DNA of 64,000 nt, taken from positions 62,001 to 126,000 of the IMG/VR virus record IMGVR_UViG_3300046507_000667. One strand, given 5' to 3'. The notes under the pieces were generated by a model, which did not search any database, had not been told where the DNA came from, and saw nothing but the letters and a program-made list of their open reading frames with translations. A program made the position numbers and the translations under genes. Shown here one piece after another: positions 305 to 60,258 of this stretch (position 1 is its first letter; every line of letters begins with the position of its first letter).

Positions 305-316
305 AACAATTCCTTA
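305..316 (+). promoter_or_regulatory. Late-type promoter AACA-N6-TA
   Basis: AACA-ATTCCT-TA 22 nt before the ATG at 339; same motif precedes many structural genes. Confidence 0.7.
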
Positions 317-338
317 GTTTTCAATAGGAATTTAGAAT

Positions 339-1511
339 ATGTCAAGAATTCTCCTAGATACATATGGATCTTTGATTCATACTGCAGTAAACGATAAACC
401 TAGATTAACTAAATTTATCACTCATATTGAGAAGTACTTTGATAAGAACCATGCTATCGTTTTTGATCAAGGACCAACTAAGAAATTACTATTTGCTAAT
501 AGTGATAAGCAAGTAGTATATGATTTTCTCGGTATGTCCGATAAAGATGTAGCTGATGTAAAGAAAGTTATTAAGACAGTACCTACTATTTACTCTAAAG
601 GTATTATGCTTAATGACCCATTCGTCATCTTATCAGTATATATTGTACGTGAACTTCATGTTCAAAAGCTTGTTAGACAGCGTGATTTAGTTCTTATGTA
701 TTTAGCATTTAAGAACTATTCAAGCTCTCAGAATAAGTTCTTCAAGTATGGTGCTAATGAACAGGTTATGGCCTTTACTTTGAATAATCTATCAGATAAG
801 TTCAAATATAAGGTATTAAAGAATAACTATGCTGTACTTAAAGATACAGTAATGAATTCACACATGACATATGAAAAACTGTTAGAAACTGGCACAGATG
901 ATATGCCGCCAATTTACTATATTCAGTTACATAGTCGTGTCAATAAGATCATTCGTAATATTGCTGGGGAGTATTACACAAACTATAATGAGAAGCGTTA
1001 TATCAATTCAGTTAAGACCTATGATGAAGAATCAGGTGGACTTATTGATTATGAAAATTCTTCTGCTCTTATTAGTGGTTTAGCTGAAGGTACACTAAGC
1101 TATTTTCTAAGCTCTTCTGTCAATATGAATCTTGTAAAGACAGTATCTGAACGAAATTCTATTCCTTCTAGTACTGTATTTCAGGCTCTTAATGCTATTA
1201 AGAAAGAAGAAGATCCTTTAGTAATCCAACTAATGATTACTAAGATTCTAACGATTATCTATGATGATAATCCAGATCTTTTAGGACGAGTTTGTTCACA
1301 AGACTTTGCAATTAATGCTATTAAGCAATTGTCAATTTCTAATACAACTAATCCTAATCTTATTGAGCTAAAGAATATTCTTGATAAGTGGCTAATGACA
1401 TACAATATTAAGTATGCACAGACACAACGATTAGCTACTAAGATGGCTTATCGTAATGCATTATATAGCTACTTTGTATATATTCTTATTCTCAATAAGT
1501 GTAAGAGTTAA
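339..1511 (+). CDS. Hypothetical protein, 390 aa, late operon
   Basis: Long ORF downstream of a late motif; no family recognised. Confidence 0.85.
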   Translation: MSRILLDTYGSLIHTAVNDKPRLTKFITHIEKYFDKNHAIVFDQGPTKKLLFANSDKQVVYDFLGMSDKDVADVKKVIKTVPTIYSKGIMLNDPFVILSVYIVRELHVQKLVRQRDLVLMYLAFKNYSSSQNKFFKYGANEQVMAFTLNNLSDKFKYKVLKNNYAVLKDTVMNSHMTYEKLLETGTDDMPPIYYIQLHSRVNKIIRNIAGEYYTNYNEKRYINSVKTYDEESGGLIDYENSSALISGLAEGTLSYFLSSSVNMNLVKTVSERNSIPSSTVFQALNAIKKEEDPLVIQLMITKILTIIYDDNPDLLGRVCSQDFAINAIKQLSISNTTNPNLIELKNILDKWLMTYNIKYAQTQRLATKMAYRNALYSYFVYILILNKCKS

Positions 1512-1519
1512 GGAATAAT

Positions 1520-58140: not shown

Positions 58141-58677
58141 TTACTTTTTAAATAAAATATCTACTTCCACTCTAGGTTTGCAACTATAGAACTTTTCATG
58201 ATTACCCTTAATGACTACCGAGTCATCAGTATAAAGCAGACCGTGAAGTGCATCATAGAATAACTTTTCATAGTTATCTAAGTCAGGCTTCTTTAATGGT
58301 CTAAATACACCCATTTCAGCTAGAATCTTATTGACTCTGGATTCACCTTTGGGAGTAGTTCTATAATACCTAGCAGTAAAGTAAATTTCTTTTGAAATTG
58401 GTTTAAAGTTGTTACCTAGCTGGTGACGAACCTGTTCATTAATATATTGCTTGAATGACTTACTTGGATCGTAAAAATGACTTAGGTTACTAACAGCCCT
58501 AGCACGAGCTTGAGCCTTTGGTTCACCATAGTAAACAAAGCTCATTTTCTCATAGGTACTTTCATCGAAATAATCAGCATGAGCTTTTTCAATTTGGGCA
58601 TATTCTTTGTCAGTAACACCTAACTCATCCATCACTTCTTGTGCCAATTGATTCATTAAATCTGTTGGTTCGATCAT
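58141..58677 (-). CDS. rusA: RusA-like Holliday junction resolvase
   Basis: GEPKAQAR.R, KPDLDNYEK..YDAL.G..Y.DDS.V; late motif at 58699-58710. Confidence 0.85.
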   Translation of the reverse strand: MIEPTDLMNQLAQEVMDELGVTDKEYAQIEKAHADYFDESTYEKMSFVYYGEPKAQARARAVSNLSHFYDPSKSFKQYINEQVRHQLGNNFKPISKEIYFTARYYRTTPKGESRVNKILAEMGVFRPLKKPDLDNYEKLFYDALHGLLYTDDSVVIKGNHEKFYSCKPRVEVDILFKK

Positions 58678-58709
58678 GATCTTTTCCTTATTTTTAACTA
58701 ACTTTTTGT

Positions 58710-60158
58710 TTACTCACCAAAATAACGTTTAACTTTATGAACCCATGCATTGGCTACGTTATATGGTTGGACAACGTTAGTAATGATATCCTTTGTATAG
58801 TTTAATGCTTGTTGAGATAGTGAGGGATCCATTGTTGCATATAATGATAATCCACCCATAGTATTCAAGAAAGCACTAGTACCGAAGTTAGTAGCAAATT
58901 GATTATAGTCTGTTGGAAGGCTTAATGCAGAATATAAATCCATAATGCTAAAGCTACCCTCAATAATCAAAGGTAAACCACGGTTACTAAATAGCATTTC
59001 ATCACCGCCCTTACGGAATGAGAAGTTATTAATAACTCCCATAGGGCAAGAGAAGAATCCCGGAGCATCAACCTGAATTAGATATGGAGTATTTAATGCT
59101 GATACGCCATCTTGCTTAGGTAGAGCTAAAGTTAGTAAGAATAGGAATGGTGTAATGACATGATAGAATACTGATCTATCATCACCATAAGGTGATACAA
59201 ACTTAAAAGATACATCATAGTTTCGAGCAAAGTGTGAATTATCAAACACTTGTGGAAACTGGAATGATGAACCACCATAGGAAGCTGAAATGGCTGATGA
59301 CATTTGACCTACTGATTGTAGATCTTTATTGTCTGATACAACTTCTGTCTGAGCAGCATCTTTATTATAGGAACCAAAGAGTCCACCAGTAGCAAATCTA
59401 AGCTGTTTCATTGCACCAGTCATACCCTGAACTGTACTTTCTAATACTGAAGTAGTAAATGAGTTATCTACTGATTCAGAAATACTAGTACCTTTCTCAA
59501 CCCATACCTTAAAGCCACCAGTAACCGCAGCTTCTGGTATATTGAAGCCAGCCAAGTCAGAAATATATCGTGGTAGACCACCTTCCCATCCAAAGATAGC
59601 AGAACCTACTCGGTTAGCTACAATTTGGAATGATCTTAGATAGTCTGCTGTATCAGGTTTAAAGGATAGATAACGAAGATCACACTTTTGCTTAATAAGC
59701 ATAGCTTGTGTATCTTGAGAAACTTTGACATATTGCTTCTCTTTATCTGGACCTTCTTTCATTGCATCGACTTTCTTAATACGTTCCTCATGATCATCAA
59801 TGATCTTTTCGGCTCTATCAAGCATAGCCTTATCTGAATAAGGTACACCCGGAATCATATTAAGAATAGTATTATTTCGTAAAGTAGTACGCTGATAAAT
59901 ACGCTGATTAGGATCAGCTTTAGGATTCATTGGTAATGGTTTACCAAAGATATAACCATACTTTTCGTCATATAGACGACTATAAGGATTATAGTTATCA
60001 TTGACGTTAAAGCTATTAAGAAGACTACTATTACGAGCAGTTCCCTTAAGAATTGGGTTAATGGCCTTTACAGCACTATCATTTTGAGCTTGTTTAACCA
60101 AAGCTCCTGTCTTTGCAGGAATACTAGAGATAGCATTCGTAATTGAACTGATATCCAT
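58710..60158 (-). CDS. Probable tail/baseplate structural protein
   Basis: Follows the tape-measure gene; FPQVF..S.F.R.Y...F.SPYG; late motif at 60231-60242. Confidence 0.55.
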   Translation of the reverse strand: MDISSITNAISSIPAKTGALVKQAQNDSAVKAINPILKGTARNSSLLNSFNVNDNYNPYSRLYDEKYGYIFGKPLPMNPKADPNQRIYQRTTLRNNTILNMIPGVPYSDKAMLDRAEKIIDDHEERIKKVDAMKEGPDKEKQYVKVSQDTQAMLIKQKCDLRYLSFKPDTADYLRSFQIVANRVGSAIFGWEGGLPRYISDLAGFNIPEAAVTGGFKVWVEKGTSISESVDNSFTTSVLESTVQGMTGAMKQLRFATGGLFGSYNKDAAQTEVVSDNKDLQSVGQMSSAISASYGGSSFQFPQVFDNSHFARNYDVSFKFVSPYGDDRSVFYHVITPFLFLLTLALPKQDGVSALNTPYLIQVDAPGFFSCPMGVINNFSFRKGGDEMLFSNRGLPLIIEGSFSIMDLYSALSLPTDYNQFATNFGTSAFLNTMGGLSLYATMDPSLSQQALNYTKDIITNVVQPYNVANAWVHKVKRYFGE

Positions 60159-60258
60159 GATACCTTCTTATAAAAAATGCAAAAATAACCCCATACCCTC
60201 TTTCGAAGGTATGGGGAATTATAAATCAACTATTTTGTTGTTACCTAATACAAAACTA

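What the first reader, a model, noticed from the sequence alone, without database searches (positions are those of the whole stretch)
305..60242. AR9-type late promoter motif (AACA-N6-TA) suggests a uracil-DNA phage in a Gram-negative host
Exact copies occur at 305, 7023, 16336, 23483, 24215, 26755, 28180, 29467, 31333, 34082, 38336, 40134, 47476, 52230, 58699 and 60231. All are intergenic or at gene boundaries and correctly oriented upstream of genes. This matches the Bacillus phage AR9 late consensus. AR9 non-virion RNAP needs template-strand deoxyuridines at -11 and -10 to recognise it. The inference is that this genome may contain dU in place of dT.
Basis: partly seen in the sequence, partly recalled or inferred. 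Interest (0 to 1): 0.6.

Follow-up and report, generated by a model that had tools for sequence, protein, structure and literature searches.

The report
AR9-type late promoters, likely uracil-DNA phage
The repeated AACA-N6-TA signal is very likely the late-gene promoter of an uncultivated soil jumbo phage related to Yersinia phage phiR1-37, read by the phage's own RNA polymerase, and several indirect lines suggest (but cannot prove) that its DNA carries uracil instead of thymine.

Summary
All 16 listed copies exist and are oriented as described. The bare pattern is not over-represented: the window holds 33 copies against 64±8 in shuffles. The signal appears only when location is considered. 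Across the 249-kb genome, 53 of 97 copies lie in the 10.7% that is intergenic (P=2e-26), and 49 of those point at a start codon. Only the 6-base spacer is enriched upstream of genes (57 copies, against 6-18 for other spacers). Copies inside genes are depleted, most strongly on the antisense strand. Positions not fixed by the pattern are also conserved, giving AACA-N5-W-T-A-G-T.

The window comes from a complete IMG/VR jumbo phage found in rhizosphere metagenomes. Its closest named relative is the dU-DNA Yersinia phage phiR1-37 (about 42% amino-acid identity).

The genome encodes all five subunits of the AR9 non-virion RNA polymerase. The valine that makes AR9 gp226 uracil-specific is conserved. 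It has no ThyA, ThyX or dUTPase, has two dCMP-deaminase-like genes, and carries every protein reported as exclusive to uracil-DNA phages.

The same spike occurs in AR9, phiR1-37 and a 55%-GC relative, but not in a ThyA-encoding jumbo phage.

Uracil DNA and a Gram-negative host remain inferences. This is a new member of a known kind.

The parts
305..316 (+). Late-type promoter AACAATTCCTTA(G). It lies 22 nt upstream of ORF 339-1511 (phrog_2921, unknown function).
   Evidence: The phiR1-37 orthologue also carries the motif.
3000..3011 (+). It sits in the last codons of ORF 1520-3019, 28 nt upstream of ORF 3040-3465.
7023..7034 (-). Late-type promoter 80 nt upstream of the tail sheath gene 5113-6942.
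   Evidence: The orthologues in phiR1-37 and AR9 also carry the motif.
7805..7816 (-). Motif copy 32 nt upstream of virion protein gene 7077-7772. It is embedded in a 12-bp-stem terminator hairpin, so it is ambiguous.
8649..8660 (-). Late-type motif at a gene boundary, 25 nt upstream of ORF 7841-8623.
16336..16347 (-). Late-type promoter 28 nt upstream of the terminase large-subunit N-terminal part, 15519-16307.
23483..23494 (-). Late-type promoter 77 nt upstream of the major head protein gene 21849-23405.
   Evidence: The orthologues in phiR1-37 and AR9 also carry the motif.
24215..24226 (-). Late-type promoter 31 nt upstream of ORF 23527-24183.
26755..26766 (-). Late-type promoter 74 nt upstream of DNA-binding-protein-like ORF 26273-26680.
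28180..28191 (-). Motif copy 40 nt upstream of ORF 27534-28139. It overlaps a terminator-like hairpin (10-bp stem plus T-run), so promoter function is uncertain.
29467..29478 (-). Late-type promoter 22 nt upstream of virion structural protein gene 28191-29444.
31333..31344 (-). Late-type promoter 37 nt upstream of ORF 30657-31295.
34082..34093 (-). Late-type promoter 29 nt upstream of helicase-like ORF 32538-34052.
38336..38347 (-). Late-type motif 169 nt upstream of ORF 37240-38166. An early-type promoter (38284) lies in between. This is the head of the operon that contains the nvRNAP beta'-C gene and a dCMP deaminase gene.
40134..40145 (+). Late-type promoter 22 nt upstream of exon 1 of the virion RNAP beta gene (40168-42936).
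   Evidence: The phiR1-37 g099 orthologue has the motif 33 nt upstream.
42924..42935 (+). Late-type motif at the end of exon 1, 21 nt upstream of the intron-borne HNH endonuclease ORF 42957-43928.
47476..47487 (+). Late-type promoter 20 nt upstream of tRNA-Arg(TCT) at 47508-47582.
   Evidence: AR9 also has one late tRNA gene (PMC5312081).
52230..52241 (+). Late-type promoter 60 nt upstream of the ribonucleotide reductase small-subunit gene 52302-53330.
58699..58710 (-). Late-type promoter 21 nt upstream of RusA-like resolvase gene 58141-58677.
60231..60242 (-). Late-type promoter 72 nt upstream of virion structural protein gene 58710-60158.
34766..36571 (-). Gene for the non-virion RNAP beta'-C subunit, the homologue of AR9 gp154.
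   Evidence: PDB chain 7s00_D, E=9e-73.
34190..34732 (-). dCMP/cytidine-deaminase-family gene next to the nvRNAP beta'-C gene. The gene order matches phiR1-37 g102-g103.
   Evidence: PF00383, 65 bits.
46560..46997 (+). Second dCMP/cytidine-deaminase-family gene.
   Evidence: PF00383, 49 bits.
40168..45533 (+). Virion RNAP beta gene. It is split into exons 40168-42936 and 44169-45533 by a group I intron that carries an HNH ORF.
   Evidence: phrog_14872 positions 283-924 and 940-1393. phiR1-37 g099 is a single 1393-aa structural protein. Rfam RF00028 at 43854-44085, 94.5 bits.
14524..53522 (.). Thirteen early-type promoters (aATATATTAT-N5-TG). The 8-mers start at 14524, 15496, 17835, 20479, 21359, 21763, 25709, 26174, 32475 and 38284 on the - strand, and at 46086, 48768 and 53515 on the + strand. 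This is the second promoter class of the two-polymerase programme.
   Evidence: The core is the same as in phiR1-37 and AR9.

Best explanation
The motif is the late (and 'continuous') promoter of a jumbo phage that transcribes its own genome with two multisubunit RNA polymerases.

Proposed mechanism:
1. A virion-packaged polymerase fires the AT-rich early promoters (aATATATTAT-N5-TG). Among the genes it transcribes are those for the five subunits of the non-virion polymerase.
2. That second enzyme uses its sigma-like gp226-type subunit to bind the template strand opposite AACA (3'-UUGU-5' at -11 to -8). It starts RNA at the A of the TA, six bases downstream. In this lineage the start is usually followed by G, then T.
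3. This drives the genes for the head, sheath, virion proteins, terminase, the virion polymerase itself, a tRNA and some DNA-metabolism functions.
4. The pocket residues that make AR9's enzyme reject thymine at -10 are kept, and the gene content matches the proven uracil-DNA phages. The DNA is therefore most likely dU-substituted, so that only phage DNA offers usable promoters.

What is shown: the motif's position, orientation, spacer specificity, extended conservation, conservation at orthologous genes, and the presence of the enzyme. What is inferred: the transcription start site, recognition by this enzyme, and uracil in the DNA.
For: Promoter behaviour:
- Intergenic density is 12-fold that of coding DNA (P=2e-26), and 49 of 53 intergenic copies point at a gene start.
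- Only the N6 spacer is enriched: 57 copies against 6-18.
- Positions not fixed by the pattern are conserved: -2 is A or T in 53/57 and +2 is G in 34-35/57.
- The modal distance to the ATG is 21-29 nt.
- Copies inside genes are depleted relative to same-phase spacers: sense 30 against 65/62, antisense 6 against 30/29 (P=2e-6 and 2e-7).

Gene classes fit the AR9 programme:
- The motif precedes the sheath, major head protein, virion proteins, terminase and virion RNAP beta genes.
- All five nvRNAP subunit genes have the early motif upstream; two of them (beta-N and the beta'-C operon) also have a late motif. The vRNAP beta gene has only the late one.

Comparative evidence:
- The same N6 spike occurs in AR9 (99 against 13-46), phiR1-37 (72 against 10-27) and a 55%-GC relative (32 against 5-11). 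It is absent in the ThyA-encoding jumbo phage Eowyn (11 against 8-13).
- Presence of the motif upstream of orthologues correlates between this phage and phiR1-37 (odds ratio 6.1, P=1e-5).

The enzyme is present:
- Homologues match 7s00_c (E=3e-81), 7s00_C (9e-114), 7s00_d (4e-66), 7s00_D (9e-73) and the gp226 chain 7s01_A (3e-26).

Uracil indicators:
- gp226 V206, Y210 and S245 and beta-N R363 are conserved. K375 is replaced by R, as in the proven dU phage phiR1-37 (their roles are described in PMC9209446).
- ThyA, ThyX and dUTPase are absent. ThyA is absent from the dU phages AR9, phiR1-37 and S6 but present in 201phi2-1 and Eowyn.
- There are two dCMP-deaminase-like genes.
- Homologues exist for all proteins listed as exclusive to uracil-DNA phages: g207, g196, g234, g244 and the g278/g282 pair (PMC10303552).
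Against: - There is no RNA data for this phage, so no start site is mapped.
- Base composition cannot be read from a sequence file.
- The marker proteins and the absence of ThyA may mark the clade rather than the chemistry.
- Several contact residues differ from AR9: I207M, Y246F, F261A and Y263F. phiR1-37 shares the Y246F and Y263F changes, and the 261/263 contacts are made by the main chain.
- No Ugi-type inhibitor was sought. None is recognisable in phiR1-37 either.
- Three motif copies (7805, 28180, 45561) sit inside terminator hairpins and may be accidental.
- The orthologue test against AR9 was not significant (P=0.26).
- The DNA was recovered by ordinary shotgun metagenomics in at least seven samples. 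That neither supports nor excludes dU.
Confidence: 0.72

Rival explanations
1. The motif is the nvRNAP late promoter, but the genome contains ordinary thymine (or another thymine replacement). On this reading the polymerase has relaxed or different base specificity, and the motif alone says nothing about DNA chemistry.
For: - In AR9 a single substitution (V206G) makes the enzyme accept T (PMC9209446), so specificity can evolve.
- Several pocket-adjacent residues differ from AR9 (I207M, K375R, Y246F).
- The genome assembled from standard shotgun metagenomes.
- Copies inside genes are strongly avoided here but not in AR9, which hints at a somewhat different selective regime.
Against: - The discriminating valine is retained. 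Apart from I207M, every tested pocket residue is in the same state as in phiR1-37, whose DNA is experimentally dU (Kiljunen 2005 as cited).
- No ThyA or ThyX is present. That excludes a ThyA-like dUMP hydroxymethylase route to 5-hmdU.
- All uracil-phage-exclusive proteins are present.
Confidence: 0.17
2. The pattern is not a promoter. It would be a by-product of AT-rich intergenic composition, of terminator hairpins, or an RNA-level signal such as a processing site.
For: - The raw count is below chance in the window (33 against 64).
- Three copies are embedded in terminator hairpins.
- The fixed part of the motif is only six bases.
Against: - Shuffling the intergenic segments gives 21 +/- 4.7 copies against 57 observed.
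- Only spacer 6 is enriched, and only in the sense orientation (57 against 18 antisense).
- The unfixed positions +2 and -2 are conserved.
- The motif is conserved at orthologous genes in phiR1-37.
- A 55%-GC relative shows the same spike.
- The control phage Eowyn shows none.
- In AR9 the identical motif maps to experimentally determined start sites.
Confidence: 0.04
3. The motif is read by the host RNA polymerase, redirected by a phage sigma-like or adaptor protein, rather than by the phage's own enzyme.
For: Many large phages without their own polymerases work this way (general knowledge). Recognition by the phage enzyme was not tested here.
Against: - The 6-bp spacing between AACA and TA is incompatible with -35/-10 geometry.
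- The genome encodes complete virion and non-virion polymerase sets.
- AR9 and phiKZ-type phages are independent of the host polymerase (PMC7598289).
Confidence: 0.03

Closest known systems
Bacillus phage AR9/PBS1 late promoters and the gp226-containing non-virion RNA polymerase (PMC5312081, PMC5449584, PMC9209446; PDB 7S00/7S01)
   Same: - The core consensus is identical: AACA-N6-T-A(+1).
- Upstream placement is the same, with short leaders.
- The two-promoter, two-polymerase logic is the same: nvRNAP genes are early, and vRNAP and structural genes are late.
- All five holoenzyme subunits are present.
- gp226 V206, Y210, S245 and beta-N R363 are conserved.
- A late tRNA gene is present.
- Group I introns with HNH genes interrupt essential genes.
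   Different: - Protein identity is only about 31% over 71 shared ORFs.
- +1 is almost always A (54/57), whereas AR9 has A/G at 76/20.
- +2 is G in 60% of sites here, but T or A in AR9.
- Copies of the motif inside genes are strongly avoided here and not in AR9.
- Ribosome-binding sites are AAGGA-type, not AGGAGG.
- The host is unknown.
- No Ugi homologue was sought.
Yersinia phage phiR1-37, a dU-DNA jumbo phage of a Gram-negative host
   Same: - It is the closest named relative: 110 of 316 ORFs are shared at a median 42% identity.
- Local gene order is conserved: vRNAP beta, Ham1-like, structural protein, nvRNAP beta'-C, dCMP deaminase.
- The early promoter core ATATATTAT is the same.
- The extended late motif is the same, with +2 G (53/68).
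- Apart from I207 (kept as I in phiR1-37, M here), the pocket residues tested are in the same states, including K375R.
- ThyA and ThyX are absent from both.
   Different: - The published phiR1-37 transcriptome work reported no late consensus (PMC5312081). The late motif in phiR1-37 is therefore my own computational observation, not an established fact.
- vRNAP beta is one 1393-aa gene in phiR1-37 but is intron-split here.
- This phage is uncultivated and from rhizosphere, with a GC content of 35.3% against 32.5%.
phiKZ-type nucleus-forming jumbo phages (thymine DNA, late promoter TATG)
   Same: They share the split beta/beta' virion and non-virion polymerases, a gp68/gp226-type fifth subunit, and AT-rich early promoters (PMC7598289).
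   Different: - The late consensus is different (TATG at the start site).
- ThyA is present in the two relatives tested, 201phi2-1 and Eowyn.
- Eowyn shows no AACA-N6-TA spike.

Membership tests
AR9-type nvRNAP late promoter | Consensus 5'-AACA-(N6)-T-A/G with a fixed 6-nt spacer. | tested here: met
   There are 57 sense-oriented upstream copies with N6, against 6-18 for N3-N5 and N7-N10. The logo is AACA-N5-W-T-A-G-T.
AR9-type nvRNAP late promoter | Located upstream of late genes (structural, packaging, vRNAP) and of 'continuous' genes, in the sense orientation. | tested here: met
   The motif precedes the sheath, major head protein, virion proteins, terminase and vRNAP beta genes. 49 of 53 intergenic copies point at a start. 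Some nvRNAP genes carry both early and late motifs.
AR9-type nvRNAP late promoter | Transcription starts at the A/G that follows the conserved T. | not testable with these tools
   No RNA run holds this phage. Logan contigs cannot show RNA ends.
AR9-type nvRNAP late promoter | [quoted passage not shown] | tested here: inconclusive
   All five subunit homologues are encoded. Binding and initiation were not tested.
AR9-type nvRNAP late promoter | Requires deoxyuridine at template positions -11 and -10. | not testable with these tools
   Only the determinants could be checked. V206, Y210 and beta-N R363 are conserved, and K375 is R as in phiR1-37.
Uracil-DNA jumbo phages (AR9/PBS1, phiR1-37, S6 group) | Virion DNA has dU in place of dT. 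| not testable with these tools
   Sequence files record T for both. The metagenome contigs give no chemical information.
Uracil-DNA jumbo phages (AR9/PBS1, phiR1-37, S6 group) | gp226 homologue with a conserved 2.1bis helix and an invariant valine. | tested here: met
   This phage has YSDKVMWSYLKN. AR9 has YSDVVIWTYLKN and phiR1-37 has YSDQVIWRYLAN.
Uracil-DNA jumbo phages (AR9/PBS1, phiR1-37, S6 group) | Carries the proteins reported as exclusive to uracil-DNA phages (phiR1-37 g207, g196, g234, g244, g278/g282). | tested here: met
   Homologues lie at G000 58088-60667, 48721-51864, 3099-5009, 244101-244997, 208686-209423 and 209416-210126, with E-values from 1e-11 to 1e-104 against AR9. The list comes from PMC10303552 Table 3.
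Uracil-DNA jumbo phages (AR9/PBS1, phiR1-37, S6 group) | No thymidylate synthase, and a phage deoxycytidylate deaminase that supplies dUMP. | tested here: met
   There are no hits for PF00303 or PF02511 in a genome that CheckV rates 100% complete. There are two PF00383 genes. Calibration: ThyA is absent in AR9, phiR1-37 and S6 and present in 201phi2-1 and Eowyn. The sample is small.
Uracil-DNA jumbo phages (AR9/PBS1, phiR1-37, S6 group) | Inhibitor of host uracil-DNA glycosylase. | not tested
   Ugi is known only in the Bacillus members. None is recognisable in phiR1-37, S6 or LPJP1 (PMC10303552), so absence would not be informative.
Phage of a Gram-negative host | Host identified, or diderm-specific lysis genes (spanins). 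| tested here: inconclusive
   This is an uncultivated rhizosphere UViG. A candidate trio of type-II membrane protein, 3-TM protein and lipoprotein lies at G000 1908-3092. PHROGs gave no spanin or holin match.

The most novel reading that the evidence does not exclude
The AACA-N6-TAG late promoter, together with a gp226-type subunit that retains the uracil-selecting valine, may mark a widespread environmental clade of jumbo phages. That clade runs from 27% to 55% GC and includes this rhizosphere phage and a complete 263-kb, 55%-GC genome. All members would have dU-substituted DNA. If so, uracil DNA would not be a curiosity of a few cultured phages. It could also be predicted from metagenomic sequence alone by this promoter-plus-pocket signature. 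A further point: the late promoters of phiR1-37, reported as undetectable, would in fact be of the AR9 type.
Probability: 0.5. Interest if true: 0.6.

Novelty: new member of a known kind. Interest (0 to 1): 0.42.

Why it matters
Uracil-for-thymine DNA is known experimentally in only a handful of cultured phages. The AR9 enzyme is the only multisubunit RNA polymerase known to read its promoter on the template strand and to require uracil there.

This analysis shows the same promoter grammar, the same enzyme and the same pocket residues in an uncultivated soil phage, in phiR1-37 and in a 55%-GC relative. That suggests the system is conserved across very different hosts and base compositions.

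It also gives a purely computational way to flag candidate uracil-DNA phages in metagenomes. Such genomes may be under-represented when libraries are amplified with uracil-stalling polymerases.

Finally, it gives a concrete late-promoter model for phiR1-37, where the literature reports that none was found.

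Tried and rejected
- Nucleotide search. A megablast of the vRNAP gene against 50,697 phage records found nothing. The relationship is visible only at protein level.
- RNA evidence. No RNA run holds the phage. All seven holders are DNA rhizosphere metagenomes kept as contigs, so start sites could not be mapped.
- Population variation. I tested whether it spares the motif. Laying four runs on 23480-29479 gave only three substitutions and a few indels, none informative, so the test had no power.
- Raw motif count against shuffles. It points the 'wrong' way (33 against 64). 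I rejected it as a test because depletion inside genes masks the intergenic enrichment.
- Orthologue-promoter co-occurrence with AR9. It was not significant (odds ratio 1.6, P=0.26), probably because chance copies abound in a 28%-GC genome.
- Search for relatives. The search for related loci with the single gp226-like protein returned only an identical contig. The alignment-based search found 14 loci. One of its two search patterns contained the valine-bearing peptide, so conservation of the valine among those hits is partly circular.
- Host inference. Phage_lysozyme gave no hit. The only SLT domain lies inside the 2090-aa virion protein. The candidate lysis trio had no PHROG support. Host type is left open.
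- dUTPase absence. It does not discriminate, because all five comparison phages also lack it.
- Complex prediction and structure prediction. Not used, because homology to the solved AR9 holoenzyme already assigns the subunits.

Full report
**What the window is.** The window is bases 62001-126000 of a single 249,347-bp contig with 35.3% GC. The contig is an IMG/VR virus record with terminal repeats, and CheckV rates it 100% complete. Near-identical DNA occurs only in rhizosphere shotgun metagenomes: seven runs from seven studies, none of them RNA. No phage in GenBank matches at nucleotide level. At protein level the closest named relative is Yersinia phage phiR1-37. The virion RNA polymerase beta subunit is 44.5% identical, and 110 of 316 ORFs are shared at a median 42% identity. 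Next come the Bacillus AR9/PBS1 and Staphylococcus S6-type phages, with 71 shared ORFs at about 31%. The window carries the tail sheath, major head protein, terminase, virion proteins, polymerase subunits, two deaminase-family genes, an RNR small subunit and one tRNA.

**Checking the observation.** All 16 listed positions are exact AACA-N6-TA matches. The pattern occurs 33 times in the window, about half of what dinucleotide shuffles give (64.4 +/- 8.2). The raw count is therefore no evidence at all. I called genes with a simple ORF/RBS procedure and partitioned the genome. That produced a strong signal:
- 53 of the 97 genome-wide copies lie wholly in the 10.7% of DNA that is intergenic (binomial P=2e-26). 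Of these, 49 point at a start codon within 250 nt.
- Sense-oriented upstream DNA holds 57 copies, against 21 +/- 4.7 after shuffling those same segments.
- Changing the spacer to 3-5 or 7-10 bases gives only 6-18 copies.
- Positions the search did not fix are non-random. The base before the T is A or T in 53/57 sites. The base after the A is G in 34-35/57, against 16% background. The next base is T in 34-35/57.
- The motif most often ends 21-29 nt before the ATG.
- Inside genes the motif is avoided relative to spacers of the same codon phase. The sense strand has 30 copies against 65 and 62. The antisense strand has 6 against 30 and 29 (P=2e-6 and 2e-7).

Four caveats apply to individual sites:
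- Site 47476 drives a tRNA-Arg gene, not a protein gene.
- Site 28180 overlaps a terminator-like hairpin, as do the unlisted copies 7805 and 45561.
- Site 38336 is 169 nt from its gene.

**A second promoter class and the regulatory logic.** An unbiased 8-mer scan of upstream DNA found a second, longer motif, aATATATTAT-N5-TG. It has 48 oriented intergenic copies. Its core is the one enriched in phiR1-37 and AR9, and it matches the published AR9 early consensus AAATATATATTAT-N6-G (PMC5312081).

The two classes divide the genes as the AR9 model predicts:
- The late-type motif precedes the sheath, head, virion proteins, terminase, the virion polymerase beta gene, RusA, RNR and the tRNA.
- The early motif precedes small genes of unknown function.
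- All five non-virion polymerase genes have the early motif upstream, and two also have a late one, like AR9's 'continuous' class.
- The virion polymerase beta gene has only the late motif.

**The enzyme.** Searches against PDB sequences assign homologues of every subunit of the AR9 non-virion holoenzyme:
- beta-N (gp105; 7s00_c, E=3e-81)
- beta-C (gp089; 7s00_C, 9e-114)
- beta'-N (gp270; 7s00_d, 4e-66, with DYDGD at residue 394)
- beta'-C (gp154; 7s00_D, 9e-73; window 34766-36571)
- the sigma-like gp226 (7s01_A, 3e-26)

Fraser et al. (PMC9209446) showed how the AR9 enzyme selects uracil. The -10 uracil sits between gp226 I207 and beta-N R363. It hydrogen-bonds to K375 and to the backbone of V206/I207. 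The V206 side chain excludes thymine's methyl group, and V206G accepts T. Y210 stacks on -9G. In this phage these residues are V217, M218 and Y221 in the gp226 homologue, and R372 and R383 in beta-N. The valine, the tyrosine and the stacking arginine are therefore conserved. K375 is replaced by arginine, exactly as in phiR1-37, whose DNA is experimentally dU.

**Other uracil indicators.**
- The complete genome has no ThyA, ThyX or dUTPase.
- It has two dCMP/cytidine-deaminase-family genes. One lies next to the beta'-C gene, as in phiR1-37.
- As a calibration, ThyA is absent from the three dU phages tested (AR9, phiR1-37, S6). It is present in two thymine-type polymerase-encoding jumbo phages (201phi2-1, Eowyn). 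dUTPase is absent from all five and does not discriminate.
- PMC10303552 lists proteins found exclusively in uracil-DNA phages (g207, g196, g234, g244, the g278/g282 pair). All have homologues here.

None of this measures base composition. These features could mark the clade rather than the chemistry.

**Comparative tests of the motif.** I ran the same spacer scan on other whole genomes:
- AR9 (positive control with mapped start sites): N6 gives 99 copies against 13-46.
- phiR1-37: 72 against 10-27.
- A complete 263,413-bp, 55%-GC IMG/VR relative found through the gp226 alignment: 32 against 5-11, with +2 G in 20/31 and the same 21-31-nt leaders. It also lacks ThyA and keeps the valine.
- Klebsiella phage Eowyn (ThyA-positive): no spike, 11 against 8-13, and no depletion inside genes.

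Presence of the motif upstream of orthologous genes is correlated between this phage and phiR1-37. The odds ratio is 6.1 (P=1e-5), with 30 shared cases including the head, sheath and vRNAP beta genes. These intergenic regions are far too diverged to align. The +2 G is shared with phiR1-37 (53/68) but not with AR9, so it is a lineage-specific refinement of the start-site element.

**Relation to the literature.**
- The AR9 consensus and its uracil dependence are established.
- AR9 nvRNAP is partly active on phiR1-37 DNA.
- Lavysh et al. state that the phiR1-37 transcriptome study yielded no late consensus.
- The 2020 review states that bioinformatics fails to predict late promoters of these phages.
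- I found no paper in the library reporting the motif outside the Bacillus phages.

The extension to phiR1-37 and its environmental relatives is therefore a modest new observation. For this window the verdict is a new member of a known kind.

**What remains open.**
- Start sites, enzyme-promoter recognition and uracil content are all inferred.
- The host is unknown. 'Gram-negative' rests on three weak points: the Yersinia relative, AAGGA-type ribosome-binding sites, and a candidate membrane/lipoprotein trio outside the window that PHROGs did not confirm.
- I put the probability that the motif is the late promoter at about 0.9. Given that, I put the probability that the DNA is dU-substituted at about 0.8.

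Noticed in passing
window 42937-44168: The virion RNAP beta gene is split (exons 40168-42936 and 44169-45533) by a group I intron (Rfam RF00028 at 43854-44085, 94.5 bits). The intron carries an HNH homing-endonuclease ORF (42957-43928) with its own late-type motif 21 nt upstream. phiR1-37 has the gene uninterrupted (1393 aa).
   Followed up: partly
window 3382-3663: A second group I intron (RF00028, 69.8 bits) lies between ORF 3040-3465 (phrog_3233/23439, annotated as RNAP beta or hydrolase) and ORF 3696-4217. This suggests another intron-split gene.
   Followed up: no
window 9420-16307: The terminase large subunit appears in two pieces 4.7 kb apart: the N-terminal ATPase part at 15519-16307 and the C-terminal part at 9420-10832. 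Several small ORFs and two early-type promoters (14524, 15496) lie between them. It is not explained whether this is a trans-assembled split enzyme or a mobile insertion.
   Followed up: no
whole genome (G000); window examples 14524, 25709, 46086: A long early-promoter motif, ATTAA-N7-tTTa-N2-aATATATTAT-N5-TG, has 48 oriented intergenic copies. It shares its core with phiR1-37 and AR9. The 55%-GC relative uses the variant ATATATAAT.
   Followed up: partly
whole genome (G000): The late motif is strongly avoided inside genes, especially on the antisense strand (6 copies against about 30 expected from same-phase spacers). The avoidance is weaker in phiR1-37 and absent in AR9. This suggests different tolerance of internal or antisense initiation.
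   Followed up: partly
window 49740-49976: An intergenic late-type motif (AACATAAGTATAG) is followed by about 225 nt of relatively GC-rich, ORF-free sequence before ORF 49977-50306. It may be a small RNA or an unannotated short gene.
   Followed up: no
window 7791-7819, 45548-45579, 28175-28203: Terminator hairpins of a recurring type (for example CCCTATACC...GGTATAGGG plus a T-run) recur in intergenic DNA. Three of them happen to contain AACA-N6-TA copies.
   Followed up: partly
window 38380-39441: A Ham1-family (non-canonical purine NTP pyrophosphatase) domain sits in a 353-aa protein. It is syntenic with phiR1-37 g100, between the vRNAP beta and nvRNAP beta'-C genes.
   Followed up: no
G000 1908-3092 (outside the window): Three adjacent small genes follow a late-type motif at 1858. 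They encode an N-terminal-TM protein (133 aa), a 3-TM protein (140 aa, phrog_2470 'membrane protein') and a lipobox lipoprotein (115 aa, shared with phiR1-37). This may be a spanin/holin-like lysis cassette, which would hint at a diderm host.
   Followed up: partly
L040 / G004 (IMGVR_UViG_3300046513_000221, 263,413 bp): A complete 55%-GC relative has the same late motif, the conserved gp226 valine and no ThyA. Other relatives at 50-56% GC exist as fragments (L037-L043). A high-GC candidate uracil-DNA phage would be unusual.
   Followed up: partly
window 23480-29479 in runs X3-X6: The phage is nearly clonal across separate rhizosphere metagenomes, with three substitutions in 6 kb. Contig depth is low (about 2-8x).
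   Followed up: yes
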